Positions 9,001 to 53,630 of a stretch of 64,000 nucleotides of DNA are shown piece by piece. The first letter of the stretch is position 1, and each line of letters starts with the position of its first letter. Source of the DNA: Pocillopora damicornis. Taxonomy: Eukaryota. The translations under genes were made by a program, and so were the position numbers. The stretch spans positions 558,001-622,000 of the forward strand of contig NW_020845300.1 of the NCBI RefSeq assembly GCF_003704095.1, in the 5' to 3' direction. Under the pieces are notes generated by a model that did no database searches, had not been told where the DNA came from, and saw only the letters and a program-made list of their open reading frames with translations.

Positions 9001-12000
9001 GGAGAGAATGGTGTCCAGAGATTGAAATCCCCAGACAGGCCGTAAATTAGATTCCTCGTGAGTTTTGGGTGAATATGATTACGAGCTTGAGAATTTCCAA
9101 AACTGAAACAAAGGGCGCGCGAACCATGGGTTAGTTTGGCAGAAAAACACAACATCCGTGGACATTAGTGGTAGAGCGTTTTGGCGCAAACAATATCCCG
9201 ATGCATCCACAGCTTTCATAGTTTTTCAGTCAGGCAAGAACTTGATTGCGTCCGAAAATTACAAGTGAACTAACTGTGTTGATCATAGAGATCATAATGA
9301 AGCCTTGCAAGTTTCTATTGGTATGCATTCCGCGCGAACTCAAATCGTCTATTCGTAGCTAACTCCTCCGAGGATCTAAAGTTCTCTATTTCTAGATTAC
9401 TTCCGTTTCCAGAGATCTCAGGAGTGTCAAGAAATAATGAACCCCTTATCGTGAATTTTCCTCACGTGGAGATCCAACGCAGCATGCGAGGTATTTGTAA
9501 CATAATAGGTCATTTTACAGTTGTGTACTTAGTTGCCAAGCCTTTGATTTAGAGTGAGGCTGAAGGTGACCTTGTTGTGATATAGACTAGTATCTAGTTA
9601 GCACGATAACAAAGTAATTTACATTTGAAAAGCAACAACGTTTGTATCTCAACAATTTCACCCTTAGCCTCACTCCTGCTCACCGGAAACATGGTATGAT
9701 TCTACAAATAACTTTACAGGCATAACCAAGGAATAAGGCTAATTCAGTCTTTTCATCTCTTCTTCTCTTGGCTAAAATACAGTGGTTCTGAACTCACTCA
9801 ACCAGATTTATCAAAATAAAGCGTATCAATTCCAGTATGGCAAGATTTCGATATGATTTAATTCATCAGCTGTTTACCTGTTCTTATAACTTAAGATTCT
9901 ATGCAGACGGACAACATGAAACATGACATGAGATGAGATCATTAAATCCAGTCCGCTGAACTCGTCATTGTAACGCTTCAGATAGCTTTGTAAACAAGCG
10001 GACACGTCTTCAATGTTATTTATGGCTTGAAGAAGGATCTGCAACAACAAACAAAACAAAAAGTCGAATATTCATCGCCAAATCCACGACGGAGATTGGT
10101 GCTGTCCACTACTTTAAATAAGGTTTATTTGCTTAGGATTTTCACCAAGCTTTTAACATTGCAAATGATGAGAAAGGAAAGTGTTCATATTGGAAGAAAA
10201 CCGTATAAAAAAACATTCATAATATTCATAAAAATGTCTACCCCTCTTATCTCAATAAATCTACAGCAAGGTTGGTGAATCCAGACCCCAAACTCATGTT
10301 TGGTCGAATTCCTATCTACCTGGTATGGCTCCTTTGGAGGGCTGCTGCAGTGTTAAATTTACAGTACTTCATTTCACGTGATTTCGTTTTACTTTGAAAT
10401 CTTTTCTACAACAAACCTTTGGTGCAACACGTCCCTGAGTCACAGGGCGTTGAGCGTAAAGTCCTGCATCCAGAGGAAAAGTAATAAACAGTGGAGACGG
10501 AGAATTGGCAGGAAGCTCTGGAAAGTTCTGAAGCAAAACAAAAAGAATAAGCTTATCTGCTCTGTACATAACAAACTACTGAGTCCATCAAAGCAACTTT
10601 TTTTGCAGTTGTACCTCTTTAATAATTGTTTTGAGAGTTTTCTCAAACCATTTAATATCTAATGATCGGCATATACGGTCCTTAATCACTCGTGTTACTT
10701 CATGCTGCCACAGGGATACCACGTATTCCTCATCAGCCTGCATCTCCTCTGAACAATTTTTTAACCCCTGAAATTAAAACATCCAGTAGTCACAACAAAG
10801 AAAATGCAAGTCTACTTCAACCCTACCACTCCCAGAATCTCAAGGAAAGTTCTTCCAACTAGTAACAATACACCCCAAAATTAATAATATACCTGGTTCG
10901 TATCACTTGCCTGCTTGCCAGTGCATTAGCACTGGGGGACTATTTTTTTGCGATATTCTGACACACAAAAAACAAATCTTCAACCGACGTGCTTTCACTA
11001 TGCATTTTAACTTTTTTCTTAAAGAGGATCGAGTCAACAGACTGAAACATCATTTCAATTGCCTCATTTCCAAAAGTATCTAAATATATTTAGCGATCGA
11101 TACCGTTTTCGGAGATCTCAGGAGGATCAAGAGTAATGTTACCCAGATAGAAATCCCAAGGCACGTCCATTTGTGCCCCTTCCCGTGACTCTCCCCCTCG
11201 ATTCGATCACAGCGTCAAGTATTTTTTAAAAACAATTTGGTAGCAGCAGACCAGTGTAATATAACGGTAGGAGAAAATTGTCCACGCCTGAGTAAAACAT
11301 ATCTAAGGCCATCGAGGTTTAGACGGAGTATTATCCAATGTCCATTCAATCGGCCCAATCACCACCCATGTAATACGTTTTGTTTCCAAACTCTCTTATA
11401 AAAGACGTGAACTTTTATGAAATACTAGTTATATGATGAGCTAAATTTTGATTGGCTTTTACTTTTGGAAGACAAACGCTTAAATGACGTCATCGTTAAC
11501 AACATTTTACACATTTTTTATCATTAAAAAAAAAAAAGATTCCATGTTTCCGTGAGTCTGTTCAGTAACAGATCACATATGACGTCAAAATGTGGTAAGA
11601 ACATTAGTGACACACTCGGCTGCACATCACGTGCCACGTTTTCGTTCATATCCCATTTTGAAGCCATCTGTGATCTATTACGAAACAGATGTAAAGCAAC
11701 ATGGAATTCCCTTGTTAATTAGCTAGCAACCTCCACATGTACAGTTCAAGTTGCGATTAATTTCGGAGCATGTAAGCTACCTGAAACACCCTCGTGATTT
11801 CCCTGAGATTGAACAGGTAATGACACCTTCCAGGAGTTGGCGAAGGTCTTAGTACATCCTGCAAACTGTTGAGCAGCATACACGACGCCATCACTATCTG
11901 CTCGTGAAACTCTTGTGGCAAACCCATGCCTTGATTCTGAGCCATGTTAGCCTAAACAAATGAAACAATCGAAAAGAGTCAAAATAGTTACATAGCAGAT

Positions 12001-15000
12001 GAATGATAGACTAATTTTTTTCTCAGCCAAGCTTTGAAGTTAGTCTTGAAAACCTTTAGTTTTGTTCTGCTGCGCGTTCTTGATGAAGTTAAACAGAGAG
12101 CCATGGTTGTACTCACCTCCAGTACGGAAGTAACAATAGTGAAGAGCGACTCTTCTGACGGAGCCGGTAAACGGAATACAGCAAAATGGCGCTGCAAGAC
12201 AAGTTAATGTAAGTTAACAAGTAAAAAAAAGCTCACCAGAAAAAGTAAGCATGTCTAAGGTACAAGGGTAAAGATCAACAGGAGGTAAAAATGGCGTGCA
12301 AAGGAAATAATACCTCCTTACTAGAGAGATTTTTATCGATGTTGTAAAATCGTTATCATACACACCTTTAGTCTCTCAGGAATTTGCTCGCTGGTGACCA
12401 GTTCTGACTGCATGTTCATAGCCGCCGTAACGACGACACCCTCTAAAACACGACGGTCAAAAGGCTTTTTGGTGTTGAACAGGACTTTTTCATCGAGAAC
12501 TTGTCGTAACAACTAATACATACAAGAGACAAGAAACCACATGTCATAGAGTGGAGTCAAAATATTTCAGGTTTTGTGGAAAGTCATCGATCCACAAAAA
12601 ATCAGTTATTATAAATAATAAACTGCGACATCGACGGTCTTAAGTCATGTCTAGATTCAGAGGTTTCGATAAAAGCCGGTTACTGACAGTCTACTACCGC
12701 CTATAAGACCTCTTAACCTTTCATTCCTAAAATCTCACTAGTAGTTCCCCATTACTGTCTGCACTACAATTCATGTGAAATAAGTTTGGAGAATTTGGTA
12801 CTGGATCAACTAATAATCCCCTAACTGATTTTTTCTTAATTCCCATCTCTTGTCTTCATGAAGTTATATCGAAATTGTAAGGCGAAATTCTGTCTTGGTC
12901 ACTCATGGGAGCTGAACGGTCAACGCTTAACGCTCATCGGTCACCGCTGACTGATTAGCCTGCGAGCAGGCTCTCCTGTCTGGGATGCGCCTTAGGCACC
13001 ACTTATGGGAAAAGTTAATGAAGCCCCTGCAGATTCACTCCTTAAGGAACCATCGATCTTGAAGCTGCTCTGCATATTTCTCAAAAGGTTAGAAAATCTG
13101 CACATATTAAGTTTATTTCTTTATAAATGTTAGGCTGTTTAAACAGAGAATCGCAAAAATCAGTTCCCAGCTGAAATCTGGTACATTGCTGGTCGCAACA
13201 CTTTGTTCGCGAAAACACAAAAAATCGACATTCCGCAAAATTTTTTATGCCTCACGGTATATTCCAAGCGCATTTCAGTCGCAAAGATAAGATCAAGAGG
13301 AAAAAGATGCAAGGTTAAACTCACCTCGTTGACCTCCTGAGTTCCATATTGATCTCGCTGAGGAAGGCTAAGATCATCTATAAACATGTTGAGTATTTTT
13401 CCTTTCTTGGCACCATACACGAATCCTGTGTCACACAATAAGTAATGTCATCTAATTATGGGCTTATGGGAAATTATTTTTGTACTGCCCGAGTTTCGCC
13501 GCTCCGTGTGAAAAGTTGTTTACCTCCGTTTTAAAATTTTTAGTAAATAGATGAAATTGTGCCTCTGATAACTGATGTATCGATTGGCTTTTAAATGGTC
13601 TCTCCCGTGCCGTTTTCAAATCAATTTTAATATGTTTCAATGTGTTCAATCTTTCTTTTGCTAGTCCAACCGTTATCGTTATGGTCTCCATCACGTAGCT
13701 CTCTCAGAGGGAGAGGAAAAGTACATAAAGGAGGTAAAAATGGGAAAAGAAAAAATGATGATACAGTGTGGTAGGAAAATGCCCGAAAACACAAAACAGT
13801 GTCGTACAATAATATCCTCTCTCGAGTGGTTGTCTTGAAGAGAAGGAGTACGTTGTACTGAGAAGGGGTCTGGACCGACCCCAGGCTGTACGAAACTGCG
13901 CACTCGGTTAGTAACAGGTACTGGGGTTAACTCACCTTGTCTATGGTAAATGTTATGTTCAATAAAATGCTGTAATGAAGCAGCTCCCGAGGTTCCTGAA
14001 TATACATAGCGTTTTACAATTTGGTTCTTGTCCTCTGAAAAACAGTGGAATGGAAAAACATAAATCTATCAGGAAAGACCATGTCGTTGTAAAGCAATAT
14101 TGAGTCAAAATGTAATTTATTTAGCGTTTTATTATCCAGCCTAAAGAAAACGGGAAGTGCTGATTTTCATAACGATACATTGTTTTTGACGCTCACCTTG
14201 CTTGTCAAGGAAGTCGCTGATCAGTGATGTTTTTCCACATCCTGCAGGACCTGTCAGCAAAATGTTTCTGCCAGAAGCGCTGGCCAACTCCATGAACTGA
14301 CGTGTACGGATCTATATGAAAAAAAAAAAAAAATCCGGGAGCTTAACAAATTAAATAAAAGCCTCCGTGCAGAAATCGTTCATTCGCTTTGTTGTTTGAG
14401 CGTATGCGCTTCAACTGTGGGACTTTCTTAGTGTTTTTAAAATAGCTGCACATTGAAAAGGAATAATTAAAGAAAATGAAGAGGCAAGTTAAATTACAAT
14501 CAGTAAAGCTGAAAATGTGATAATATTTATGAGATGTGAGGACTTACTGTGTCAACTGTGTCCACGAATACCTCTCCGAGGAGATCTGCTGCATCAAAAT
14601 AGCTTACTTCTGGAACTCTTTATCGAAAAAGAAAAAAAAACCAAAAGTGAATACATTTACCTGGCTACATGGCTACGGGTATGTCGGTAACGATTGGTAA
14701 TTTAATTTCCCACAAATAATTGTTCAAGAGAGTGGCTCTGAATCGCTGTGACAAAACTCACCTTGACTGCCACGGGTCCCACTCTCCAGATTCATCAACA
14801 TAATAATCAAACACGGAGATTTCTTGATCATAATCTGGCAAGGCAGTTGTCAGGGACAGTAACAGCTCGCTGAACTTCTTCCTGTCTTGTTCATCCAAAA
14901 GGCCACCAAATGACCAAATAAGCGAGAACAAGTACAACCTCTCAATATGAAGCTCGCCACCAATGTCAGTGTTGCCCTAAAAAGAGGTGAGATCGAAACA

Positions 15001-17869
15001 TTTGATCATAAACAGAAACACAGCAACTTGCATTATTTTTTACGTTCACTAACATGACTCTGCAGTGCAAATTGATTAAGTTACTCTCCATTCTTCATTA
15101 TAGAACACAGACTGAATGGAGAAACAGCACGCATTTTTCCCAGCTTTTGGAATTTATGAACTCCAAAAAAGCAATTATACACCTTCACAAAAGTACTAGG
15201 GGAACACAGAGTTAAGAAAGATCGTAAACTCTTTTTTAGCCTGGCACTGCAAGCTCAGCAGTACCAACAGCAGGAAAGTCAACATAAGTCTCACGCTTAC
15301 CTCGATCAATGCCTTTAACAGTGCGAGACACGTGTTAAACAGCCCCACCTCGCAAACTTTCATGAATGGTCTACAAAAGAGAAAACAAATAGGATTACAA
15401 CCAGTAACGTAACAAACTCAGGAGAACTCTGATCGCGACTCAACAAGCAGAGCGACTTGGGGAGATATCGATACAAGCAAACATTTTGAAAGATTCCCGC
15501 TAGGTTTAGATTCCCTCGTTTTCACAAGATTAAGTTTGATCATTCTTCCCTTTTGCTACTCCTCCCTGATAAGAATCCAGGCCACCCCTACCCTCCCCAC
15601 CTCTTAGAAATGGATTATAAAGGCTGGCCCTCTGAGAAGGTAAAACAAAAGCTAACCTTGCTTCATAGTGAACAAACTGCGAGATGACATCAACGGTCTT
15701 GTTAAATGCTCGTTGCAGACACTAAGAAAGAGGAAGAAACAAGGCGTCAGCTTAAGAACTGTTCAAAGTTCTTCGCTATTATTCCCAAATTACAATAATT
15801 TCTTTGTTCGAATCGATCTTAGAAACGCGCTGTTTTTATTTGTTGATAATAAACACCTACATGGCTTTCTTGGGGAGATCTGTTTGCCAGCCAGGCTTCA
15901 GCCAAAGGTCTCCAGCCCAACACAGTCTCATCCATGTAGACCACACCCTAAGGTCACAAATGAAATTAAAAATAAAAACCAGAGTAAACAAGGACACACT
16001 TCAATGTTGTTTGTGTGAAGTGCTGCTTCAAGGAGGCTCGTTTGAGTGAAGGGCGTTTAAAGTTAAACATCGTAACTGGAAATGATAGGTATCTTAAGCC
16101 AATTTACTGCACTTTTTTTCAGGCGACCACAGCAATATCAACACTTGTATGATCAAGCATAGACGCTTTTTCCCGATGGGTCAACCTTGGCTCAGTGGCC
16201 ATCTCACTTTCGTCAGAGTGACTGGCGAAGGGCTAACGCTAATTTATCTTTATGTGTTATATTTGCACCCAGCGCACCAATAATGACGAGGAAGCGGTGA
16301 CTTGGAACTTCTGTTTGACAGAATGAAGCTGCAGTTTCAAGAATTCAAAACTGACTTCTTATAACAATTAGAGGAACAATTGAGACAAAACCATACTTAC
16401 ACATCTGGAGACAGTGGAAGGTGAAGCGTCTGTCAGATCATCTGTCTCAAAAATCAGTTTGACATATTCTGATAGATATAGCCTTTCACCGTTCAATAAG
16501 TTCAGATACTGAAACAACAAAAGGCACGGAGACAAAATCACAAACATTACCACTTTGAAAGTGCATCATTTTCGACAGAAGACAACATCCTTCAACGTGC
16601 TAGCGGCAATTAAACATAGTGCGCTGGCTTTCAACAACAATCCGCCCGTTTTATATGATTTCGCAAATTGACCACACGCACAGCGAGATGCGTGAAATCC
16701 TTTTTTCGGTAAACATGTTATAAACAGCAAAGGTGAAATTAAAAAAAATGATTGTAAAATAAACGGTTTTTTGAAATGATCTTAAGTCGTCTTACATAAC
16801 TGAAAAAAAAAAAATGAATGGCAAACTTTCCAGCAGTCATTTTACCCATTTCCCTTACATCTGGTGCCTTTAAGGAGAAACGAGCAGGGAGTTGAGGGGA
16901 GGAGAGGCAACAAATTACTAATGAGATATTGTGAGTGAAAAGGTTAAAAAAGACACATTGTGGTGCCTTGGATACGGGAAACGAATCTCATTTATGGCCA
17001 GTCCTGACAAAATCTACCCATTCTGCTACCCGTGCTTTAGAACCCATAAAAGCCGCGTTCTAACGAGTGAGGAAAGTTCTCTAGACATGTCATTACCTCT
17101 CCTTTATCCAACGCGCTGCTCAGAAACTCAGCCCATCCTTGATGCAAAGGAGCGTCTAAGCATAGCCAGGTCGTCATCTTATGCACACTATGGTCCTTGT
17201 TGGCCTTCCTGAAGTAAGCAGTGAAGATGCCATCCTCAAAATCTGAAGATGAGTTCACTTTACCAAACATCAGAGCTGGATCAGACACGGCTAATGGATT
17301 TATTCTCTGTAACTTGTGTGTATGCATCTGTGAACCTGTGTTCTTGTGTTTTGTCAGTGAACATTCACTGAGGGTCTCCACCAGTCCTGAGATACAGGAG
17401 GATTTGCCAGTACCGGGAGGTCCGGCGACAATGATTCCTAAGTGGTATAGGAATAGTGTGAGCAGAGAAAAAAACCTTAGATATGTTCTTTCCTAGTCAA
17501 TATGTCATTCGTAATCGTAACAGCTTGGTCTTTACCAACTTCAAATCGATAGCGAATTGAATTTGAATGTTACTTTATTGTTGAAGGAATTGGTCCAGGG
17601 AGACCGAAAAACATTTCAAAGATACGAAAACGCGACCCAAAAGTAAACTCCATTAATTTCTGACTCTATGTAGAAGACTGGTATTCTTGTTATAATGGTG
17701 TGAACCTAGCGCTGTCACCATTGTCAAATCCCCAATGCTCCGATAGCCTGCTCCAGGCGGCAAATTTGTGGAAACAAACGAAAAAGCGGGGACTGCGCCG
17801 CCTGCTCCGTGATTTGTCTCCACTGCACAATTGGTTGACAAAGGCTAATAGGTAAAGAGTTTCCGCTGG

Positions 17870-17900
<31 letters not shown>

Positions 17901-20900
17901 AAGGGAATGACAAAGAGCTAACGCTCGAAACGTCAGCTTTAGAAAGTCTTTACAGTGGCCAATTTCCATTATCATCTCAGTTGCTAAAACTACATCATCT
18001 TATAATTTCCCCCACCGACGCAGCATCACGGTTTCTCTAAAAACTCTAAGAACAGGTATATGTTGTACGCGAGATCAATAAAATGACCACCTAACAACAA
18101 TTTTAGGAAATAAATAACCTCGGTGAACTTTGGAGAGAGTCCACAGTTGATGTATCTTTGCAATCCAAGGCTGATGAGGGACAAAACCTTTCTCCCGTGT
18201 GTGCGCCAGGAGAACTGTCTCGAAATCTTGAACCACTTTGGTTATGTGGAATGCTGGGGCAGGAGGTTTAGGAAGACCATAGAAAACATCACGTAGAACC
18301 ATGTTAAATACGTTAAGTTCCTGAAGGTAAACGAGAGGCTTAAAATGAATGATAGGTTGACAAAGAATAAACCAATAAATAGGAAATTATGCACCCTATC
18401 GACAGTGAGAATTTCAACGAGTCAGTCTTAGGAAGTGTTCCCGTTGCAATTGGTAATAAGATTTACCTCTGAGAATACACGATGGATTGCTAAAGCCACA
18501 AACGTGAAGTTTTCTTCAACCACTACCACTTTGTAAAGATACAATAGTTACCTCGGGTGATAATCTTGGACCAATACAATCTTGCAGTGATTGTAAAACG
18601 AACGAATGCTCTAGTCTGGCAGCAGAAGTTAAAGCGGATGGAGTAGTAGGCTTTTTGTCTTTCTGACCAAACTGGCTTCCTCTGTCCTTTCCAGCTCCTG
18701 AGAAAAATTTAGACATCTATTCCATCATTTCCGTGATTATATTGTCTTCAAAAGCGTTCCAACATGCATATGAAAACAGCGAGACTAAATCCAGATTTAA
18801 TGATAAGCAGTCACCTACAGAAATACGCAAGTTTTTTTTTATTTCTAGGTCGCCGTTATTTGATAAAATAGTTTGTTCAACGGCCCATAGTCCTTTTTCA
18901 GGGGTGCCTGCCCAAAGCCGTCTCACTTGACTGAGCAAAATATGTCTTTCGCACAATAAGCTGATTAAAAGATGCAAACCAGAAAAAAAATAAACAAACA
19001 ACGCACTAAACAAGACAAACAAACACAACAAATCACATATAACATTTGAAAACATTCCGTAGGACTTCACTTCTGCCGAAAAACTTCGCAAAGGAGAGTG
19101 ACAACTTTTCAACATGATCCGCGCTTCACGCAACAGCATTTTGCGCCAAATCGTCTGTGTGTTTAACGCAAGGCCGTTTTACCGTCAGTTACGTTCTCTA
19201 CGACTGTTCTCGACCTTACTTACCAAACTGTGTGGCTACTGACTGCGTACTGGAGGGTCTCGCCAAATCAGCTTGCACGGCATTAAGTTTGCTTCCCAGA
19301 GGTCCCTGAGAGCTTTTCCTGTTGCCAGCATGTTGTATGACGCCCACAAAAGACGACAGGCTGAAGTTGTGGTGACTCTTTCCACTTCTGTCGAGGAAGG
19401 ATACACAGAAAACCAAACATGTGAAATATCTTTATGGAAAGTTATTCCGATTTCCACGCTCTCGTTCGTCAAGGGTATACATATGTCGTTGATCAACGGG
19501 CGCAAGCTGACGCAAGCACTAGCACATACTTTACTGCTACGCAACGTTGTTTCGGGTCCAGCGCTTTTATAGTCAAAATTATTTTCAACACGAAAGAAAC
19601 CATAAAAAATAAGTTTAGTGAGAAAAGTAAAGCCGAAAAGAGAAGAATTCAACGAAAAATGGAACGGGGATGGCTTGGGATGGACCAGATTAAAACAGAT
19701 TACCAACGACGAACTTGAGAATAAGACAAAACGAACAAGGATGGTTGAAAATAGAAGGGTAAGTGCTCTTCAGCTACAAGAATTATTCCCTTCCAAAAAT
19801 TCTTAAATCGGGGTCGCTTCTTTATTGAAGGGTCTGTTTTAATGTGGTGACTTACAGTTGCTCCTTGCAGACATCTGCGACAAGCTTGAGACGATCCGCT
19901 AAAATCTTGGGGGACTTAAAACCCTGCCCTGCGCAGTGAGCCCTCAGTATCAGAGATGTGTCTGGCATCACCATGGCAACAGAACGGAACAAAGCACGGA
20001 CCTCAGGCGGGAATTCATAATTGTGTCCATTGGAACAAATGGTGAGGAAAATGGAAAAGTTGGGTTTAACAGTGACCTGCCATTAAAGACAAAACAAAGA
20101 AAAAAAGCCGTTAATGGTAGCCCTTGAGTAGAAATAACGCTTAATTTTTGTCAGTATTTTCAATATACATAACTGCTGCTCTTCAACTTTGATCTGAAAT
20201 GTATTTTCTGAGATTCTAAACTTTTTTTTTTTATCATCATCAAAGCGAAACTCGGCTAGGGGGTCCTGTGCCAATTAGTTGTTCTTGTTTCATTTTGATG
20301 TCAAGTGAGCAAAGAACCCTTCAACACATAGCTACCATTACCGGCGGAACATTTCCCGATTTTGGTGACACGTGGCGATTAGAAATATCTAGGAAGGTCT
20401 GTCGGTTGCATCTTACCAGACGCATATAACCTAGAACTAGGTCATATGCCTCTGGTGTTACCTAACAGTTCCCTGATTGTTTGTTGTTAATATGCTTCTG
20501 GTGTTACCGAACAACAATTCCTCAGCTGTCCCTGATAGCTTTTTGTTAATATGCTTCTGGTGTTACCGAACAGAAATTTTTCAGCTTTCCCAGATAGTTT
20601 GTTGTTAATATGCTTCTGGTGTTACCTAACAGTAATTTCTCAGCTTTCCCTGATAGCTTTTTGTGCTTCTGGTGTTACCTAACAGCAGTACTTCAGCTTT
20701 CCCTGATAGCTTTTTGTTAATATACTTCTGGTGTTGCCTAACAGCAATTCCTCAGCTTTCCTTGAAAGCTTTTTGTTAATAGGCTTCTGGTGTTACCTAA
20801 CAGCAATTTTTCAGCTTCCCTGATAGTTTAGTGTTAATATGTTCCTGGTGTTACCTAATAGCATTTCTTCAACTTTCCCTGAAAGACTCTTGTTACTCTT

Positions 20901-23900
20901 TAACGCAAAAGGCGGAGAGAGGCCCTGTGACCGAGTGACTAAGGCCAGAGCTTGGACCAAGACTTCTCCACCTCGAGTCCAGCCCACTGCCCACTCTTAT
21001 CTAGCTATCCCTATTATCTACCACATTGCAGCAATTTTTATAATCACATACATCCTTTCCATCCTCCAAAGTGCAGGTAGAAAGTCCACCTCTCAAAGCG
21101 AGTAGCACAGCTTGGATCTCAAACAGCATAACTGAAAGACACTCCATGTTTATTTTATGGAACTCATCCATCAGACCCCAGCAACCTTCCTGCAACAGAA
21201 AAGACAGCAAGAATTAGGTCTTCAAGACAAAAAAAGAAAAAAAAAAAAAAGAAACCAAGAGCTCATAGATTTCTCACCTCTGCCAGACCTACAATAATCT
21301 TTCCTATCGCTGTTGAAGACATCTTTGGAGAACAACTCTGTGAGACCAGATAACGACCAAGCAAAGATGCTAGACCCTGTGGAAACAAACATACCATTCA
21401 ATAATGAATACTTGGGGAAAAAAAAGTTGCCGAACGTTCGTTTTTTAACCCACGACTTTCCAAATGGTACTTCAGATGTTCCTCAGGAGCACCTGATGCT
21501 AGTAACAAAAGGACAATTAGACAAGATGTAGATTCATGTGGCGAAGAAAGGAGAAAAGCAAGGGTAAGAGCAAGATTAAGGAGCAAAGCAACAACTGCAA
21601 GCAAAAATTACCTTTACTGTCTCAGTTTTTCCTGTTCCTGTTGGTCCAACAAGCGAACCCCCAAAGACATTCCATACGGCCTAAACATGATCAGAACAAA
21701 AAAGCGCTTTAATGAATCTACTTTCCCGAAGATCCTTTCCCCTTTATGTATTTTCATATATCGGTAAGCACACGAGGCTCACAAAAAGCCCCCACTTCAA
21801 CAAGCACATTTCGTCCCTCGGGAAAGCCCCAGATTACAACAAAGTCAGATATCTGCATTTTGCTCCCAAACCAAAACAGAAACAGTTCATTAACTATACA
21901 ATTGTTCCGCTGATCAACAAATCGCATTACCTGTGTCAAACTCAGAAAGCACCTCTCTGTTATGGGAGTAAGGGCGAGGGAAACATCGCAGCCGTAGAAT
22001 TCAAAGCCATAAGATAGCTGAGCGTCCAACATGTGAATATAAAGATCCTCATGCTCCTGAACACCAGCTGTAATCTTGGGAGGTTCCGAACTGGCAGCAC
22101 GACTAACGGCTCCTTCCAGTGAAGGCAATAATGTAAGTGAAGGTGACCTCCCTAAAGAGTAACGCATAGTCAATAACTGAATATTTTATAAGTAACAATT
22201 TTACAGTATCTACATTTTGAAAAATCGGGCTAAATGTTTTCGAGTTCGTTATTTTTTGATGCGTTTATTATTCTGTCTTTGGTGTCCTTCCATCATTTTG
22301 AGTTCATATCATGTGGTTTCTTTCAAGTTAAATGCTCTTTTTTTATCATATTCTAGAAGTATTTGTTTTATTTAAGTGCATGGTTAGTGTATATTCCTTT
22401 TGATACAGAAATGTCACTTCTACAGCTGTACGTGTAACTTCCAGAAAGTGGGTAGATGGTTGCCAATCTTCTTTTTATATTTTACATTTCATACGTTTTT
22501 TCTTCCTTCAAACTGTACAAATTAATACGAGTTTCAGAAGCGTTTTATGCGAAGTTGAAAGTTCTCTAAGCAACATAATAGGCTAAAGATTCACTAACCA
22601 GGTGCTCTGCTATTGTCTGTTCCATAGAACCTGATATTTCTCTTCCATTCAAAGTCCACTACATCTCTAAGCTTGCGCCTACCGAGGTCTTCGAGAACAT
22701 CTCTTAAGTACATTCCTTGCTGTGGAAAGTGAAGTTCTCATGAGGGACCGACTAGTATAGCTGCTTTAACTAGTTGCAGAGTCTGAAACAAATTGCGACT
22801 ATTGCTTCGCGTTTTGGGTGGGTGCTGGTGTATTTTTTACCCAAAGCATTTCGTATTCAACCCTTTAACTCTCATGAGTGACCGAGAGAGAATTTCTCCT
22901 TACAATATTAATACAGTATCAGGCAGACAAGTGAGGAGAATAAAGAAAACTCAATTAGGGGACTACAAGTTGATCCAATACCAAATTCTCCGAATTGGCG
23001 TCATGAGTATTTTATGGCAGAAAGTAGGGAGAATTAGTAATGAGATCTTGGGAGTGGAAGGGTTAAAGGGTTAAAGATCACGTGTGGAGGCAATGTAAGA
23101 GTGAAGAGTCTTCCTCGAGAAAACAAAACATACAACATGTAAATTATAACCCCGGCCTGGGCTCGAACCGTGACCTCTTCACCCCGAGTCTAGCAGGCTG
23201 TGACACTGGATCGTTGTGTATTCCAGTACCGTAATCCCACCAGTTGTAATGCTGGTGAGATTACGGTATTGATTGTGCATTAATTTTACTCACCGAGACC
23301 AAGGTCTCCAGTCGCAGTTTATGATAGGAAGTCATGGGAGAGTCAGTGTGTTTCCAAGAACCCCTGGCCAGGAGGTTTGGCAGCTTGCTGATAAGTGACC
23401 AAAACCGACGAGAGGCGTTGGGCATTGCTTTACGGTCAATACGAATATCTCCGATTCCCTAACAGAGAAAGACGTGCTATTAAGTAAAATTCATACATGG
23501 AAATAATTACAGCTGCTTTTCAAGTTGTTAGATAAACGTATACGAACCAATCCAATACTTATGCTTTATTTTGTAACAAACGACCAATTATTTTAAACAA
23601 CGCTATCTAACTGACAAACTTCGATTTGGCTTGAAATCCCCATATAAACCTGACACCAAGGCTAACTGATTCAGTCATCAAGATGGATTCTCAATAAACG
23701 CAGACCAATCATCTTCAATACCCCACGATAACTTAAGCGATATACTTTTAGACTATGTCATATCCTAAACGAATGCAGTTTATATAGCATAGGCACGTAC
23801 AACAGCACGTAGACACTTACAGCCTCACATTCCCTTGTCCAGATGTAAAGCAGTCCTAATCTACAGGTCTGTGAAGGATACTGGAAACAGAAAGTCATGT

Positions 23901-26900
23901 GAGAAACACCACCTGTGAGAGACTATTATTCACGACCATACGACAGGCCCACCAACCACCACACAAAAGTAGTTACCTGTTCACGGCTAGCCAAGCTAAG
24001 GGCATAACATGAGGCGTTACAGCTTTTCGTCTCACGGAGTGAAAATTAAGATGTGCGTGTGAATTACGGGCATCTGCGCTTTTAAGTGCAATTCTAAAAT
24101 TGATATGGCTAATTCTTTTGCTTTTCAGCTAAACATCGTTGATACGATGAGAAGTTCAATTTCTCTTATGTATTCTTTAAAGACTCTTAGAAATAACCCT
24201 TAATCAATCAGGGAAAACACTGAGTTATTGATAATTTATGCCTTGACAAACCTTGAAAATCCACTCTTCTAGACTAAGTCCTGAGTCAATATCCTGAATA
24301 CAATCTACGATGGAGGATCGCAGAGATTCAGTGATACTCCTCAACAACGCAGCCAACCACACGTCAACACTGGAGACAAGGGGAACCTAGAATCATTAAC
24401 GATCAGAAAAGATACACAACATAAAAATGCTGTTCAAACGCTTGAATATTATCAGACATACAATAAATACGGTTGCAAGGGGAGAACTAAAAGAAGCATC
24501 ACTAAAGAAACAGCAATTGACACAACCTATTCTCCGTTTTTCTATTTGAAAAAACTATCAAGCACCCTTTATTTTCTTGTAATTTCTTCGATTAATACAC
24601 TGCTACAAAACAATTGACGTGAGAGATGGACGCAAGTAAGAGAGCTGAGAGTGAGGAGACCACGTGGTGCCGCGCCCTTAAAATTCGTGCGAACTCTTGG
24701 GTCGCATACGGATTAGCGATAAGAATGTTGGAAAGTAATAAGCAGGCTTGACATAGGAGGAATACTGAGCCAACAAAAAAGGGATAATGGTCGAGTAACA
24801 TTCGAAATGATTTTCAACTTAACATCTAGCGTTCTTTGCAAAGGTGGTAAAGAGAAACACATCCTTTTGGTCAGCGAGCTAGAATACTACCTATCAATCT
24901 ATCATGCCCTTTTCGATTTCCAGTTATTTTTAATCTAGTTATAGATGTCACCTTTGTGATAAGTTCCAGAGTTTCTCCCTGCTCTGAGGTTACAGCTACA
25001 GCGAGATTATTGGGAAGATGACTATGCCAATCGGGTTCAGCGTTTCGCACTTCTAGGGTCGAGGTCAAAATGCTTGGCTTCCGTACTCCCGGAACTGATT
25101 CTTTCGAAGCTTGGACAACAATGTCAGAAATCTTCCTGAAACGACTCCCAAATGTATCAGCAAAAGGAAGTGGCGAGATTAGATCCTCCCTGCCACTCCT
25201 ACTCCGCAATGAACTTATGATAGAGCTCTTCTTCTGAGCCACTGTTTCTGGTTCTTGTTGAGTTAACATCACGTCACGTACACTGTTGAAGATGCATCTG
25301 GAAAAAAAATTGAAGAAAAGAAATTCGTGAGATGTTTGCTCAAACACAAAGCAACAAGGGGTGCAATCCTTACGTGAGCTGCTTAGTCCTCGAAAGTTAT
25401 TTTCAATCAAAGTGAAAGTTTGAATAAACGTCTTCCGGGGTAGATAAATACCACAAGCAGGGGCACATGCAAGAAATTTTTGTTGGGGGAGGGTCCAAGC
25501 TTTGATCCAGAAAACACATTTTTTTAACACTAGAGCCTAGATAAGATATAAAATGTTTCATGTAGGTAAATTTCAAATACTTCATATCGAGTAGTAATTC
25601 GCGATTCTGTCTTTGGGAGAATTTTGGTTGGAGACAAGTAGTGGAAGAACCAAAGGCTTGATGGAAGGNNNNNNNNNNNNNNNNNNNNNNNNNNNNNNNN
25701 NNNNNNNNNNNNNNNNNNNNNNNNNNNNNNNNNNNNNNNNNNNNNNNNNNNNNNNNNNNNNNNNNNNNNNNNNNNNNNNNNNNNNNNNNNNNNNNNNNNN
25801 NNNNNNNNNNNNNNNNNNNNNNNNNNNNNNNNNNNNNNNNNNNNNNNNNNNNNNNNNNNNNNNNNNNNNNNNNNNNNNNNNNNNNNNNNNNNNNNNNNNN
25901 NNNNNNNNNNNNNNNNNNNNNNNNNNNNNNNNNNNNNNNNNNNNNNNNNNNNNNNNNNNNNNNNNNNNNNNNNNNNNNNNNNNNNNNNNNNNNNNNNNNN
26001 NNNNNNNNNNNNNNNNNNNNNNNNNNNNNNNNNNNNNNNNNNNNNNNNNNNNNNNNNNNNNNNNNNNNNNNNNNNNNNNNNNNNNNNNNNNNNNNNNNNN
26101 NNNNNNNNNNNNNNNNNNNNNNNNNNNNNNNNNNNNNNNNNNNNNNNNNNNNNNNNNNNNNNNNNNNNNNNNNNNNNNNNNNNNNNNNNNNNNNNNNNNN
26201 TTTATAATCTTGGTTAATCTCTCAACAAACGTGACGCTTTCTACATTGTTGAACCGAACAGTATGAAAGATGCCTTGTCACAGATGAACCTATGACTTGG
26301 CCTTGCTCACCAACAAATTGTTGGACCTTAGCGATAATATCGGACCACGAAATTCCAAGGTCCAAACGTCCATCCTCGTGAGATTGATGAATGAAAAGCA
26401 TTTTTCTTCAATGTCCATCGTTTTTCCCTTCATTGAAACGCTGCCGAGTGGAATACCGTTGCTCTTTAGAAAGGCGCACTATTGCTGACCCTTAAGGAAA
26501 AAATGTAAATTGACTCGCTTGCTTCAATACCTGTAAAACATTTCTTGTTTCATACGCTCTTTTCATCATCTTCATGTAGCTCTTGTCTACTCTTGCAAAC
26601 CGATTATACTCTTGTGGAAGGTCCTGCATGAAAAGTGGAAAGGTATGTTACACGTGATAAACTCGTGCTTAACGAGCACTGACGTCAACTGGCACTTACC
26701 TTAGCTGTTCCGCCATGACTGAAGACCTCCTCGAGATGTTGCCACAAATCTTGTACAGTCAACCACTACAAAAAAAAATTATGTAAGCAATTTCACGTTG
26801 GGAGTGCAAAAGCCATTTATTCACAAAGTCACGGACAAGTAACAGCAAGTTTCTTCGGATATGGTCCACTCTAATTTTTTTCCAATTTCACCCATCGTAC

Positions 26901-29900
26901 ATCTCCTCTTTGGTCCTATTATTTTTGGATGTACAGGGGCTTTGATACAATTTGCATATCAAGTCCGTACTTTGAAAACTGTGTCACTGTTCCCTATCGT
27001 TAACTATTCTCAAACATATATAATTATAATTTGCCGTTTCCTTAATCTGACGAGAGACTGCAGCGCAGAAAAAAAAGCAATAGATCACCACTAACTGCTG
27101 CGTCCTATTTATAGTTCCAATAAAAAGCGCAGAAAGTTACGTTCACGTACCTGCTCTAGGACCTCACTGATTTCTTTTAACTTGATGGCCCATGCTGCAG
27201 CCTCGTCACGAAGTGGTCCGATGTGACGTGATGTCAGCATTAGAGCAAGAGTGGCTTGCGCATCTTCCAACAGGTCTAACAGATGTTCAGTGTTACTATG
27301 GCTCAGACACACCAAGCCTCTGTTCTTGAAATTTTCGAAGGTAAGGACCTGCAAATAGTGAGTCCGTTAGTAACAATGCCATATCACTTAAAGAGCTGTG
27401 TTACCACATTTTATTTAAGGTATTTCAAATTACAAACTTAAGGAATAAAGGCCACCGTTTTCGAGAAGATGAAGCTCTTTAAACATTTACCTGTTCCGTC
27501 CACTCCTCCTCAGTACTTCTCATTTTGGCTTCCAACTCCAGCTCTCTACTAGCACATCGGCATATTTCCTCTATTGCCGCCTGGTGTCTAAAAAAATATA
27601 AGTGGACACTTGGATTACGCCGAGACACACTTGGCCACAAATTGCTGCAACACGACGGGGGAACCATTCGCAACGTTGATTAGTCACATGTGACATGAAA
27701 AATATTTGAGAAAAATTTTGTCGCTGCGACTTAATTTTGTCAATGCTGTTGGTCGCACAAATTCAAACTAGCTTGAACATTCGACTCGTGACTAAAATTA
27801 ACCGTCTAACTGTAATGGACGACCGATCTCGCGATTTACTATTTAATTTTCTCTTTTATTGCCTGAAACCTATATGGAGAGGCACCATTCGCAACCCAAA
27901 CAACTTGCACTTACTGAAGTAATCCAATATCCAACAAGTGAACAAGTTTGAAGATGTGCGCTTCGAGCTGGAAAGACGAACCTGTAACACTCATCACCTG
28001 TAGCCAATGGCGATTACGAATCTCCTAAAAAAGAGTAAAAGGAGAGTTCGCATGAGAACTATAGGAAGACACTCTAATAATAAAATTATTCTGCGGCGAT
28101 CACCATCGCCATAACGTTGAAGGAAACAACGAAAAAAAGATTTCTCAGGATAGCCAATTTATGTAACAAAGAGGCTGGAATGTACCTAGCAGAAGTAAAG
28201 ACGTTAATTGTACCAACCGAGAATAAAAAGAACTGTACCGCAAAAAAAACAAATTTAACACTTCGACTTTTAATTCATCACTACTATTAATAAGGACATA
28301 CTCAGACTTTCTTTCTTTCAAGCAGAGGACCGAGTCTTAATTGAAACTTAAGAAAGGAGGTACTTGTTTCTAAAAAAACACTTCCTTCTGATCCGAATAC
28401 AGAAGAACAAGAATGAATACTTTCAATTCTCTAAAACACCAGGAGGCAAAAACCGTAGGAAAAAACGCTTCCAGTACATACTTTTGAATTAAGTTTGTGC
28501 AACGTAGGGAAGACATCCAGGTAATGTTTTATGGCATCTCTCATTTCTTTGTAGGCATCCCACTCTTGTATTCTCTGAGGCAAACGAAGGCACTCTTGCC
28601 AATAATGCTCCATCTGCAACCAAACAAAACAAAAAAGGAAACATTCTCAGTATATGTGAGAGATGCGATCGCTTAATACTAGCGCTGGGCTCAGAATCTT
28701 GAATTGAAAGGACTAGATACCAGCTCCGGCCAGGGTCATTTTCTTGGTCAAGACACTTTATTTTAAGAGTTCTCTCTCCACCCAACCAAGAGTAAAAATT
28801 GCTCCCGGCGGAATGTCACGGAAACTGGGTAAACTGCTGGGGATGGACTTTCATTCCATCCAGGCGGAAAAGTAATACTCCTGGTCGCTACATGCCATGG
28901 AAACCGGGATAAGGTATGACATTAGTAGGCCAATGGTTTTGTAAGACTTAGCTTAACCTGATATCTAAAATAAAATTTGTGCTTGGAATTCTGTTCCTTC
29001 GAACAAAAGTCTCTTGTTTAACATGGATCAATAGGCGTAGACTTGAACTGACAGTGATCTTTAGATTCTGGGTCGAACAGAGGGAATATGTGTTCAGAAT
29101 ATTCCCTTAAAAGCGCAAGTGTAACACTGCCCAGGCCAGCTCCGTTTTTGAAAGAAAACGCAATGATTGTGGCCAGTCTTTTATGGACTTAGCTGAGAAG
29201 GAACGATGACAAACCAAGTCAACCACAAGTTTGTAGTTTTCTGAAGTTGCTATCAGAAATGGTAAAAAGTAAAACGAAGCTTGTCAGAAGAAAATAAGAT
29301 CTAAAAACCTAGTAGCATTTGTCCTTTGATTTTAACTGTAACAGCTTTACCTCGGATATTTTAAATTCCTAAATCTTAAATTCTCCAGCTGGGTTATGTG
29401 GGAAGTGATTTGAGAAAACGAGACTATCGTAATGTAGTTTTAAACATTACTGTACCTCCTGATTTGCGACAACCAGATCCACCTCTGACCACAGGGTATC
29501 CCTAAACCTGAAGAAGACACAGTTTGTTGGAACCTTAAACTTCACGTAAAGTTTGAAAATAAAATTCTAAACAGTACCAGCTTGCTTTACTGGTAGTTTA
29601 TTTCTTTTCTTTACTTTTCCTATGTGAGACATAGACCAGTGCAGTTTTACACACTGCCGGAAAATTCGTGTTACCAAGCTGATCGTGACATGGCTACTAA
29701 CCTTTGATCAAACGAGATGAACTGTTGAAACAGACCGTACAGCAAACCAAGAAGTTCGAGTTCCTATAGAAAAGAAAAGGTGAAATAACACTTTATATGT
29801 GAAGCTGTGTACACCATAGAGAACTGCCGAAAGCTGTTTAACTTGTTCATGTACTGCGCTATCAAAATTAATGAATAACTTGTTTCGTTCGGGGCCATCA

Positions 29901-35096: not shown

Positions 35097-35127
<31 letters not shown>

Positions 35128-52800: not shown

Positions 52801-53630
52801 TGAGACTTGAAGTTGATTTGCGGGGGGATTAAAATACTTCATTTACACTAAGAATTCTTAATAACATGGCAAAATCGTTCTCCTCCGCTTGAGACACTTG
52901 GTTCGGTTTGTTGTTTACTGCAGATCTGGCTGAGTGGAACTTTCCTAGGCTCAAATTTTTGGCTAACGCCAACTTCGAAGTAATGTCAAGGGGAAGAGTG
53001 TAAGGAACTAAAACATCGGTTTCAGCTTACCTAAGTTTCTGTCTACAACATAAGGTATCACTCCGTTTGGCCATCGCGATGTCTGTGATTTTTTAACAGC
53101 TCGTCTCCTTCGGATATGTCCTCCTTGGATAATAAGGCGCGTTTTCCAGTCTAAAACGATATCTCCCTGGTATAGAGTCCATCCGTCAAAAAAAGCCTTA
53201 TTACCTGCAAATATTCCAGTTGGTTAGATATTACTTTAGAGGTTAATTAGGGCAGATAGTAAAGAAAAGAGCTCTTAAGTATGGATCCCGCTCTTTTTTC
53301 AAAAGCTATCAATTGCTCCAAACGTATTCCGCGGCGTTTGACACGGTCTACGCGCAATTTACTTTTGTGGTTAGCGTTAACGACGACGAGCGGCAAATCA
53401 AAGGATTTTCTGCAAGTATGGAGACATAAACACAGCTATTCAAAGAACGGACAGAAGCCGTGCACACCTTTACGGCCAATCACTTCTTGATTTACTTCCC
53501 AGGGCTCGAGACCAACCGAGTCATCGGCAAGACTAGAAGTTTTCTTTTTGTTGTCAAGGAGAATAGGAATTGCCGATAAGTAAACGATATGCGCAAACAT
53601 TAAACCAAGACCAAAACGGTGAACCAACAT
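46838..53630 (-). CDS. Secreted astacin-family (M12A) zinc metalloendopeptidase with C-terminal kringle domain, ~391 aa, 6 exons
   Basis: Exons 53468-53630, 53031-53204, 52002-52122, 48298-48491, 47460-47690 and 46838-47130 are phase-compatible and total 1176 nt including the stop. Signal peptide MLVHRFGLGLMFAHIVYLSA; propeptide Asp-switch YQGDI; furin site RRRR; WPNGVIPY; GCWSYVGR; zinc motif HEIGHAVGLWHEQSRQDRD (~48353-48409); Met-turn SIMHY; kringle CFNSTSGDGREYRG..MCQPW..NYCRNP..PWCY..WQYCDIVIC; stop TGA at 46838. Confidence 0.93.
46870..47130 (-). other. Kringle domain of the astacin protein (single terminal exon)
   Basis: Six cysteines in kringle spacing, with YRG, CQPW, NYCRNP, PWCY and W-YC motifs. 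Confidence 0.9.

What the first reader, a model, noticed from the sequence alone, without database searches (positions are those of the whole stretch)
19224..21680. Dynein heavy chain whose main catalytic site (AAA1) has lost Sensor I and Sensor II: candidate pseudo-motor dynein
Seen: the spliced AAA1 keeps Walker A (GPTGTGKT) and Walker B (LMDE), and the arginine finger donated by AAA2 (SPSTVSRC) is present. Three near-invariant motifs are replaced: DEFNR becomes DEFHK, Sensor I FITMNPGYAGR becomes FLTICSNGHNY (Asn lost or shifted), and Sensor II HYDFGLR becomes HHNFSLS (Arg lost). Known: AAA1 is the primary ATPase driving the dynein powerstroke, and these sensor residues are needed for hydrolysis. 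Inference: the frame stays open over ~4,000 traced codons and 70 exons, so this is a maintained gene rather than a pseudogene. It may be a nucleotide-binding but hydrolysis-impaired dynein acting as a brake, scaffold or regulator in cilia or sperm flagella. It appears distinct from DNHD1 because it has a full gamma-type long tail.
Basis: partly seen in the sequence, partly recalled or inferred. Interest (0 to 1): 0.8.

Follow-up and report, generated by a model that had tools for sequence, protein, structure and literature searches.

The report
Coral orthologue of non-motile DNAHX dynein

Summary
On the minus strand lies a dynein heavy chain whose AAA1 keeps Walker A (GPTGTGKT) and Walker B (DE). 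DEFNR has become DEFHK, the Sensor I Asn is replaced (TICSN), and the Sensor II Arg is replaced (HHNFSLS). The AAA2 arginine finger (SPSTVSRC) is present.

The gene is real and maintained:
- 92 resolved exons, 70 of them in the window, giving a 5,240-codon open frame (66 codons hidden in an N gap).
- Spliced poly(A) transcripts in four independent RNA studies.
- pN/pS of 0.13.

It is not new. It is the coral orthologue of DNAHX (founder XP_041462850, sea urchin; Chai et al., bioRxiv 2025), a subfamily related to outer-arm alpha (DNAH5/8) chains and reported as non-motile, with ATP trapped in AAA1. Our gene is 45% identical to the founder over its full length and falls in the same fully supported clade. 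It shares 14 of its 15 insertion sites with the founder, including the AAA4S "PS2i" lock and the stalk and MTBD inserts.

The coral also keeps canonical DNAH5-type and DNAH8-type genes. DNHD1 is a remote clade.

Small additions: anthozoans keep a complete P-loop, DE and arginine finger, and every DNAHX member examined lacks the AAA4 P-loop lysine.

The parts
1..43326 (-). In-window part of the DNAHX gene: ATG at 43326 and 70 exons. The last 22 exons and the stop codon lie 5'-ward of the window on the + strand, down to about -12,409 in window coordinates (G000:C1935, loci L001/L002).
   Evidence: Spliced model from transcript contig L003 and guide P0214. It matches P. verrucosa XP_058947938.1 at 99.3-99.6% with no gaps.
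42653..43326 (-). Exon 1 with the start codon (MDERHWWF...).
   Evidence: 92% identical to residues 1-225 of Montipora P0214. Segment 1 translates with no stops from this ATG.
26531..43326 (-). Tail (DHC_N1 type) and start of the linker, residues 1-1797. It carries the family's tail insertions, e.g. the 86-residue insert at 37790-38897.
   Evidence: The tail exon 33977-34402 best matches outer-arm alpha/gamma chains in the PDB. Insertion map.
25669..26200 (.). Assembly gap (N) that hides 66 codons (residues 1798-1863). It was left unfilled.
   Evidence: N run found. The size comes from ungapped alignment coordinates on both sides.
21931..22151 (-). Exon 33: start of the AAA1 module, with an anthozoan-only 28-residue insert (22057-22140).
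21612..21680 (-). Exon 34: AAA1 Walker A GPTGTGKT (21624-21647), intact.
21278..21376 (-). Exon 35 of AAA1.
21052..21189 (-). Exon 36: Walker B with Asp-Glu kept, but DEFNR has become DEFHK (21154-21174).
19856..20076 (-). Exon 37: Sensor I loop FLTICSNGHNY (20017-20049). Cys sits at the canonical Asn column, and the Pro, Tyr and Arg of NPGYAGR are gone.
   Evidence: HMMER alignment to dynein-1, MAFFT alignment, RNA contigs.
19224..19387 (-). Exon 38: Sensor II HHNFSLS (19354-19374), with Arg replaced by Ser.
18615..19296 (-). 52-residue insertion in the AAA1 small domain (residues 2420-2471, spanning an intron). The sea urchin DNAHX has 48 residues at the same site.
17097..17437 (-). Exon 41: AAA2 with an intact Walker A, GPPGTGKS (17400-17423).
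16401..16424 (-). AAA2 SRC motif SPSTVSRC, the arginine finger that faces the AAA1 site. It is present.
14228..14251 (-). AAA3 Walker A GPAGCGKT, intact.
8892..8918 (-). AAA4 P-loop remnant GSIGTHLNS (canonical GVGGSGKQS). The lysine is lost in every DNAHX member examined.
6383..6511 (-). [quoted passage not shown] It has the family-conserved flank QIPWAG and the helix SILLEKINLKH.
1965..5557 (-). Stalk and microtubule-binding domain with four insertions: CC1 (4448-5557), MTBD (3453-3792 and 2577-3332), CC2 (1965-2411). Pfam's stalk model PF12777 no longer matches.

Best explanation
The locus encodes the DNAHX orthologue of a pocilloporid stony coral. It is a 5,240-residue dynein heavy chain related to the outer-arm alpha/gamma (DNAH5/8) class.

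Shown here: the gene is intact, spliced, expressed and under purifying selection. It belongs to the DNAHX clade and carries the family's insertions. Its AAA1 site keeps the nucleotide-binding P-loop, the Walker B Asp-Glu and the AAA2 arginine finger. It has lost the Sensor I Asn and loop, the Sensor II Arg, and the Asn-Arg of DEFNR.

Inferred from the sea urchin cryo-EM work and general AAA+ knowledge: AAA1 binds ATP but hydrolyses it poorly or not at all, so the motor sits in a pre-powerstroke-like state. The AAA4S insert holds the C-terminal cap. The inserts in the stalk and MTBD weaken or abolish microtubule binding. The protein therefore acts as a non-motile partner or scaffold, pairing with another heavy chain as 'dynein-X', probably to keep axonemal dyneins inhibited during delivery or assembly in sperm flagella or cilia.
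For: Identity and membership:
- 45.4-45.5% identity over essentially the full length to the founder XP_041462850.1 (P0191), against about 30-37% over a few hundred residues to canonical chains.
- In two ML trees (4,370-4,386 columns) the gene sits in a clade with the founder and with sponge, cnidarian, mollusc, echinoderm and amphibian members, with SH-aLRT 100.
- 14 of 15 insertion sites are shared with the founder.
- The AAA4S insert shares sequence motifs across the family.
- Pfam finds all motor domains except the stalk model PF12777.
- Length is 5,240 aa, against about 4,600 for canonical chains.

A functional gene:
- No stop in 1,797 + 3,377 codons.
- A 14-kb intron-free transcript contig matches 85 exon blocks at about 99%.
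- Eight GT..AG joints across AAA1-AAA2 are seen in RNA contigs from four studies.
- pN/pS is 0.127 (82 synonymous, 36 non-synonymous; p = 8e-27). In AAA1 the count is 12 synonymous to 2 non-synonymous.

Motif states.

Not the only outer-arm alpha gene: C2136 groups with DNAH5 and C3096 with DNAH8, and both have fully canonical AAA1 motifs.

Mechanism in the founder: ATP retained in AAA1, no post-powerstroke class, PS2i contacting the C-terminal cap, and a heterodimeric phi particle (paper).
Against: No biochemical or structural data exist for the coral protein. Unlike the sea urchin protein (Walker A Thr to Val), the coral AAA1 has a complete GPTGTGKT, keeps Asp-Glu and keeps the arginine finger, so residual or regulated hydrolysis cannot be excluded. 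The hairpin part of the AAA4S insert is about 15-20 residues shorter in anthozoans, so the lock may work differently. Assigning the MTBD inserts to 'pre-H3' and 'H5' rests on alignment position only. The RNA runs are whole-colony (meta)transcriptomes, so a sperm-specific role is not shown. The functional model in the source paper is itself a proposal in a preprint.
Confidence: 0.88

Rival explanations
1. It is still a working, perhaps slow, motor. Non-canonical residues substitute for the lost sensors, and AAA1 hydrolyses ATP and drives a powerstroke.
For: Walker A, the Walker B Asp-Glu and the AAA2 arginine finger are all intact in anthozoans. AAA1 is under purifying selection (12 synonymous to 2 non-synonymous). 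The replaced motifs are themselves conserved from Nematostella to Pocillopora.
Against: The Sensor I Asn and Sensor II Arg are needed for hydrolysis in AAA+ ATPases (established knowledge). The Asn at +2 is not conserved. The stalk and MTBD carry four inserts and no longer match PF12777. The AAA4 P-loop lysine is lost. The sea urchin orthologue was seen only pre-powerstroke, with ATP bound.
Confidence: 0.08
2. It is a decaying duplicate (pseudogene) of an outer-arm dynein gene.
For: Catalytic motifs are degenerate and there are many low-complexity inserts.
Against: The frame is open over 92 exons. pN/pS is 0.13. Correctly spliced poly(A) RNA is present in four studies. Identity is 83-85% to Montipora and about 67% to Nematostella in the AAA1 region (68% by mean tblastn), with full-length orthologues in many phyla.
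Confidence: 0.01
3. It is the coral orthologue of DNHD1, the other dynein heavy chain with a degenerate AAA1.
For: Both are over-long heavy chains with disordered inserts and a poorly conserved AAA1 (paper discussion).
Against: Oyster proteins annotated DNHD1-like form a separate clade on a stem of 2.0 substitutions per site, far from the DNAHX clade. The window gene keeps the Walker B Asp-Glu, which the paper says DNHD1 lacks. Its tail is of outer-arm alpha/gamma type.
Confidence: 0.01
4. It is simply the coral's DNAH5 or DNAH8, as RefSeq names its orthologues, with lineage-specific changes.
For: Database names for orthologues are 'DNAH5-like', 'DNAH8-like' and 'dynein gamma chain, flagellar outer arm-like'. 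The tail is of outer-arm alpha/gamma type.
Against: The genome has two other genes that group with DNAH5 and DNAH8 and have canonical motifs. The window gene lies outside the canonical outer-arm alpha/gamma clade, which has SH-aLRT 100.
Confidence: 0.02

Closest known systems
DNAHX (founder XP_041462850, Lytechinus variegatus; Chai, Suchenski Loustaunau, Zheng, Yang, Zhang, bioRxiv 10.1101/2025.01.18.633724)
   Same: It falls in the same clade (SH-aLRT 100) and is 45% identical over the full length. It has the same over-length (5,240 vs 5,272 aa) and the same insertion sites in the tail, linker, AAA1 small domain, AAA4 small domain (PS2i), CC1, MTBD (two sites), CC2 and C-terminal region. The AAA1 Sensor I and Sensor II are degenerate. 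An outer-arm alpha-type tail is present. It coexists with canonical DNAH5/8.
   Different: The particular substitutions differ. The coral keeps the Walker A Thr (GPTGTGKT vs GGTGVGKT) and loses the Sensor I Asn that the sea urchin keeps (TICSN vs TVNSE). Sensor II Arg becomes Ser, not Lys. The hairpin part of the AAA4S insert is shorter. There is one extra anthozoan-only 28-residue insert before AAA1. No structure or biochemistry exists for the coral protein.
Canonical outer-arm dynein alpha/gamma heavy chains (DNAH5, DNAH8; Chlamydomonas gamma; Tetrahymena alpha)
   Same: The tail (DHC_N1) type and overall domain order are the same. This is the closest canonical class in trees and in PDB searches of the tail exon.
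   Different: Canonical chains have invariant GPAGTGKT, DEFNR, TMNPGYAGR, HYDFGLR and the AAA4 motif GVGGSGKQS. They match Pfam's stalk model and are about 4,600 aa long. The window gene fails on all of these points. The coral has its own DNAH5-type (C2136) and DNAH8-type (C3096) genes.
DNHD1 (dynein heavy chain domain-containing protein 1)
   Same: It is an over-long heavy chain with disordered inserts and a degenerate AAA1. It has been proposed to be non-motile and is needed for sperm flagella (paper discussion).
   Different: It is a separate, very divergent clade. According to the paper DNHD1 lacks the Walker B catalytic residues and its inserts are at different sites. The window gene keeps Asp-Glu and has an outer-arm type tail.

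Membership tests
DNAHX | Groups with the founder XP_041462850 to the exclusion of all canonical heavy-chain classes in a heavy-chain tree | tested here: met
   Two IQ-TREE (LG+G4) trees of 52 rows each. The clade with the founder has SH-aLRT 100 and a stem of 0.54-0.55. The accession of P0191 was verified.
DNAHX | Unusually long protein (about 5,200-5,300 aa) caused by many insertions along the whole chain, including a prominent tail insert | tested here: met
   5,240 aa. There are 15 insertion sites of at least 15 residues, 14 of them shared with the founder, and the tail insert is 86 residues against 97.
DNAHX | Insertions in stalk CC1 and CC2 and two insertions in the MTBD (pre-H3, H5) | tested here: met
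   Inserts of 32, 30, 38 and 23 residues lie at the same alignment sites as in the founder. PF12777 is not detected, though it scores E = 7e-31 in a canonical chain. Assignment to particular helices was not tested.
DNAHX | Pre-sensor-II insert (PS2i) in the AAA4 small domain | tested here: met
   A 43-residue insert sits at the same site, with the shared QIPWAG flank and a conserved helix motif. The central hairpin part is shorter in anthozoans.
DNAHX | AAA1 catalytic motifs (Walker A, Sensor I, Sensor II) poorly conserved and unlike canonical dyneins | tested here: met
   Sensor I, Sensor II and DEFNR are degenerate, while Walker A is intact in anthozoans.
DNAHX | Coexists with canonical DNAH5/8 genes in the same genome | tested here: met
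   C2136 (DNAH5-type) and C3096 (DNAH8-type) both have canonical motifs.
DNAHX | ATP trapped in AAA1, motor locked pre-powerstroke, no microtubule-based motility | not testable with these tools
   Known only from cryo-EM of the sea urchin protein. This needs biochemistry or a structure of the coral protein.
DNAHX | Forms a heterodimer ('dynein-X') and phi particle with another heavy chain | not testable with these tools
   The partner heavy chain is unidentified even in the source paper.
DNHD1 | Groups with DNHD1 proteins in a heavy-chain tree | tested here: not met
   Oyster DNHD1-like proteins (P0490, P0493, P0497) form a remote clade.
DNHD1 | AAA1 lacks the catalytic Walker B residues (as stated in the DNAHX paper) | tested here: not met
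   The window gene reads LMDEFHK, with Asp-Glu kept.
Canonical outer-arm alpha/gamma (DNAH5/8) | Outer-arm alpha/gamma type tail | tested here: met
   Best PDB matches of the tail exon are Tetrahymena alpha, DNAH5 and Chlamydomonas gamma.
Canonical outer-arm alpha/gamma (DNAH5/8) | Invariant AAA1 motifs GPAGTGKT, DEFNR, NPGYAGR, HYDFGLR, and placement inside the canonical clade | tested here: not met
   Motifs. The gene lies outside the canonical clade, which has SH-aLRT 100.

The most novel reading that the evidence does not exclude
Two readings go beyond the published account.

(a) In anthozoans the DNAHX AAA1 is not simply dead. It keeps a complete P-loop, Asp-Glu and the arginine finger, and its replaced sensor motifs are conserved from sea anemone to stony corals under purifying selection. 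It could therefore be a slow, regulated nucleotide switch rather than a permanently ATP-locked site.

(b) The lineage may be older than animals. Two non-metazoan proteins (P0244 from a metagenome, and P0245 with EukProt id Nk52_evm2s805) are the supported sister of the DNAHX clade. They have a dead AAA1 Walker B and a degenerate AAA4 P-loop. An AU test rejects DNAHX forming one clade with animal DNAH5/8 (p = 3e-50), though long-branch effects are not excluded.
Probability: 0.2. Interest if true: 0.55.

Novelty: new member of a known kind. Interest (0 to 1): 0.3.

Why it matters
The gene shows that the DNAHX family extends, with all its structural hallmarks, into reef-building corals. These animals release sperm into water, which fits the proposed link with external fertilisation.

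Public annotations call these genes "DNAH5-like", "DNAH8-like" or "outer arm gamma chain", so they can be mistaken for working outer-arm motors in ciliary gene inventories, in expression studies of coral reproduction, and in disease-gene orthology tables.

The comparison adds three points that a specialist could use. Different lineages disabled AAA1 in different ways. Cnidarians kept the nucleotide-binding and arginine-finger residues. Loss of the AAA4 P-loop lysine is universal in the members examined. None of this opens a new question, because the central idea was published in 2025.

Tried and rejected
- **Exon chaining from tblastn HSPs alone.** It failed at six junctions because HSPs read through short introns. 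I replaced it with the transcript-guided model.
- **PDB searches with the Sensor I exon and the tail exon.** Both returned only canonical chains. No DNAHX chain appeared, and the preprint lists placeholder PDB codes.
- **Word search with P0098 to get canonical animal DNAH5/8.** It returned oomycete and other protist outer-arm chains instead. The animal DNAH5/8 and DNHD1 sequences came from the search with P0245.
- The genome search with P0098 and Pfam with P0291. I used P0107 and P0227 instead.
- **P0244/P0245 as possible DNHD1-type proteins.** Rejected: their nearest named relatives are DNAH5/8, and DNHD1 lies elsewhere in the tree.
- **Earlier scan notes.** They held nothing on other dynein heavy chains of this genome.
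- **Not done.** No structure prediction, complex prediction or fold search, because only single exons or proteins over 1,200 residues were available by reference.
- **Operators' rules.** The joined spliced model was never sent to a search tool. Searches used single exons by reference or database proteins, and the joined model was used only in local scripts.

Full report
**Observation.** The minus strand of the window holds the quoted peptides in open stretches:
- GPTGTGKT in 21579-21680
- LMDEFHK in 21004-21213
- FLTICSNGHNY...ALFRSVAMVMPD in 19855-20082
- HHNFSLS in 19219-19431

Pfam's dynein AAA1 model (PF12774) matches these pieces, but weakly. In a scan of the whole genome with that model, about 18 contigs carry a dynein AAA1, and this locus has the weakest best hit of them all (44 bits). 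HMMER aligns the Sensor I exon to cytoplasmic dynein-1 with a Cys at the canonical Asn column and a one-residue gap. No solved dynein class scores above 40 bits.

**Gene model.** The window is G000:C1935:558001-622000, and I fetched the 20 kb on its low-coordinate side. A single tail exon (33953-34402, given by reference) was searched against 1.84 billion representatives. That search, followed by a word search with the best full-length hit, gave full-length relatives. The Montipora foliosa protein P0214 (5,240 aa) maps end to end on the locus, from residue 1 at 43326 to residue 5,240 at about -12,406. Its only sizeable hole coincides with the N run at 25669-26200.

A 14,086-nt Logan contig from run ERR9592236 (L003) aligns to the locus in 85 intron-free blocks at about 99% nucleotide identity. 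Nearly all junctions are GT..AG with perfect flanks. The final model has 92 resolved exons. Segment 1 has 1,797 codons from the ATG to the gap, and segment 2 has 3,377 codons from the gap to the stop, with no internal stops.

The model matches Pocillopora verrucosa XP_058947938.1 at 99.6% and 99.35% with zero gaps. This fixes the hidden part at 66 codons and the full length at 5,240 residues.

**Expression and constraint.** Eleven RNA-seq runs from four studies hold 20-30% of the sampled words of window 17097-22151, where exons make up 31.7%. Contigs from four of these runs, one per study, show all eight splice joints across AAA1-AAA2. The joints read CT..AC on the + strand, which is GT..AG on the gene's strand, and they fall at my exon borders. 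One 10-kb poly(A) contig matches every listed exon piece with no differences.

Of the 23 exonic variants listed there, 20 are synonymous and none changes a motif residue. Against L003, the coding sequence has 82 synonymous and 36 non-synonymous differences. That gives pN/pS = 0.127, with p = 8e-27 against neutrality. Within AAA1 the count is 12 to 2. Neither is met.

[quoted passage not shown] The founder is sea urchin XP_041462850 (5,272 aa, annotated DNAH8-like). The paper reports the following:
- It branches next to the outer-arm alpha chain.
- It carries insertions in the tail, stalk and MTBD, plus a pre-sensor-II insert in AAA4S that contacts the C-terminal cap.
- Its AAA1 motifs are non-conserved, it retains ATP in AAA1, and it is seen only in the pre-powerstroke state.
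- It forms a heterodimer and phi particle with another heavy chain.
- It occurs from sponges to frogs but not in mammals.

P0191 in my searches is that accession. The window gene is 45.4-45.5% identical to it over essentially the full length. It is 83-85% identical to Montipora and 94% to Stylophora, and about 67% to Nematostella in the AAA1 region. Canonical chains reach about 30-37% over a few hundred residues.

Two maximum-likelihood trees of 52 rows and about 4,380 columns put the window gene in a clade with the founder and members from sponge, jellyfish, anemone, corals, molluscs, annelid, nemertean, echinoderms, hemichordate, amphioxus, tunicate, sturgeon and amphibians (SH-aLRT 100). 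Within that clade the gene is nested in Cnidaria, next to Pocillopora.

**Other family hallmarks.** Relative to ten canonical chains, the window protein has 15 insertion sites of at least 15 residues. Fourteen are shared in position and rough length with the founder (window coordinates):
- five in the tail
- two in the linker
- one in the AAA1 small domain
- one in AAA4S
- one in CC1
- two in the MTBD
- one in CC2
- one near the C-terminus

Pfam detects every motor domain except the stalk model PF12777, which scores E = 7e-31 in a canonical chain. The AAA4S insert is homologous, not just co-located. All members share the QIPWAG flank and a helix of the type SILLEKINLKH, both missing from the canonical DNAH8 that aligned over this segment. 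The central hairpin part is shorter in anthozoans.

**Canonical paralogues and DNHD1.** A canonical query finds two further loci in the same genome, C2136 and C3096. Stitched from their exons, both read GPAGTGKT, DEFNR, TMNPGYAGR and HYDFGLRNILSVL. In the tree, C2136 groups with DNAH5 and C3096 with DNAH8, inside a canonical outer-arm alpha/gamma clade with SH-aLRT 100. Oyster proteins annotated DNHD1-like sit on a separate, very long branch. So the gene is neither the coral's DNAH5/8 nor a DNHD1.

**Nucleotide sites.** Canonical chains are invariant at the AAA1 motifs, whereas DNAHX members differ from them and from each other. Anthozoans share one version:
- Walker A G-P-T/S-G-T-G-K-T
- Walker B box D-E-F-H-K/R/Q
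- Sensor I T-I/F-C/S-S/T-N/H/T
- Sensor II H-x-F-S-L-S/T-S

The Asn two positions after the canonical site is not conserved, so Sensor I Asn is best called lost. The AAA2 and AAA3 P-loops and the AAA2 SRC arginine are intact. The AAA4 P-loop lysine is lost in every DNAHX member examined (G-x-I-G-x-H-L-x-S against GVGGSGKQS). The preprint's main text does not mention this.

**Mechanism.**
- *Shown:* gene integrity, expression, constraint, clade membership and motif states.
- *Inferred from AAA+ enzymology and the sea urchin structure:* ATP binding without efficient hydrolysis at AAA1, a pre-powerstroke-like resting state stabilised by the AAA4S insert, impaired microtubule binding, and a role as a non-motile partner of another heavy chain during flagellar or ciliary dynein delivery.
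- *Main uncertainty:* anthozoans keep more of the catalytic apparatus than sea urchins do, so slow or regulated hydrolysis remains possible.

**Side issue.** Two non-metazoan proteins (P0244 and P0245) are the supported sister of the DNAHX clade. They have a dead Walker B and a degenerate AAA4 P-loop. An AU test rejects a tree in which DNAHX and animal DNAH5/8 form one clade (delta lnL 279, p = 3e-50). The group was named after the tree was seen, the model is simple and long branches are involved, so this is a lead only.

**Verdict.** This is a new, well-documented member of a known kind, misnamed as DNAH5/8-like in public annotation.

Noticed in passing
window 46800-53300, minus strand: A separate upstream gene with an astacin zinc-protease motif (HEIGHAVGLWHE) and a kringle-like exon (NYCRNPRGKRARPWCYT). 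The dynein gene starts only at 43326.
   Followed up: no
window 20440-20870 (intron between exons 36 and 37): About seven tandem copies of a unit of roughly 60 bases (...ttgttaatatgcttctggtgttacc.aacag...ttcagct.tccctgatag...). They are visible in the raw sequence and produce spurious open frames on the minus strand.
   Followed up: no
window 17773-17941 (intron between exons 40 and 41): RNA contig depth is in the thousands in all four runs, with many loose ends. This looks like a dispersed repeat transcribed from elsewhere, not part of the dynein mRNA.
   Followed up: no
L003:175-182 vs window 35862/35425: The transcript contig has 2 nt fewer than the genome's GT..AG junction predicts, which breaks its own reading frame upstream of position 390. 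The genome and the orthologues are in frame. This is probably an assembly error or a rare alternative donor in that run.
   Followed up: partly
window 8892-8918, and all DNAHX proteins (P0191, P0215, P0159 and others): The AAA4 Walker A lysine is lost in every family member examined (G-x-I-G-x-H-L-x-S). It is a conserved family signature that the preprint's main text does not mention.
   Followed up: partly
P0244 (ENA metagenome) and P0245 (EukProt Nk52_evm2s805): These are non-metazoan heavy chains of about 4,500 aa with a dead AAA1 Walker B and a degenerate AAA4 P-loop, but with a detectable stalk domain. They are the supported sister of the DNAHX clade, which hints that the lineage may predate animals. 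It could also be long-branch attraction.
   Followed up: partly
P0040, P0241 (cephalopod 'DNAH5'), P0235 (bdelloid rotifer), P0471 (acoel): These very divergent proteins fall inside the DNAHX clade. Alignments for the cephalopod and rotifer members show even Walker A or Walker B lost. Cephalopods fertilise internally, which does not fit the proposed link with external fertilisation.
   Followed up: no
G000:C1390:504353-506100: One of the roughly 18 dynein AAA1 loci has an unusually long uninterrupted frame (401 aa) over AAA1, unlike the exon-rich structure of the others. It may be a retrocopy or another divergent heavy chain.
   Followed up: no
Pfam columns: The precomputed Pfam lists of all DNAHX-family proteins lack PF12777 (microtubule-binding stalk), while the canonical heavy chains in the same table have it. 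This is a simple annotation filter for finding DNAHX genes.
   Followed up: partly
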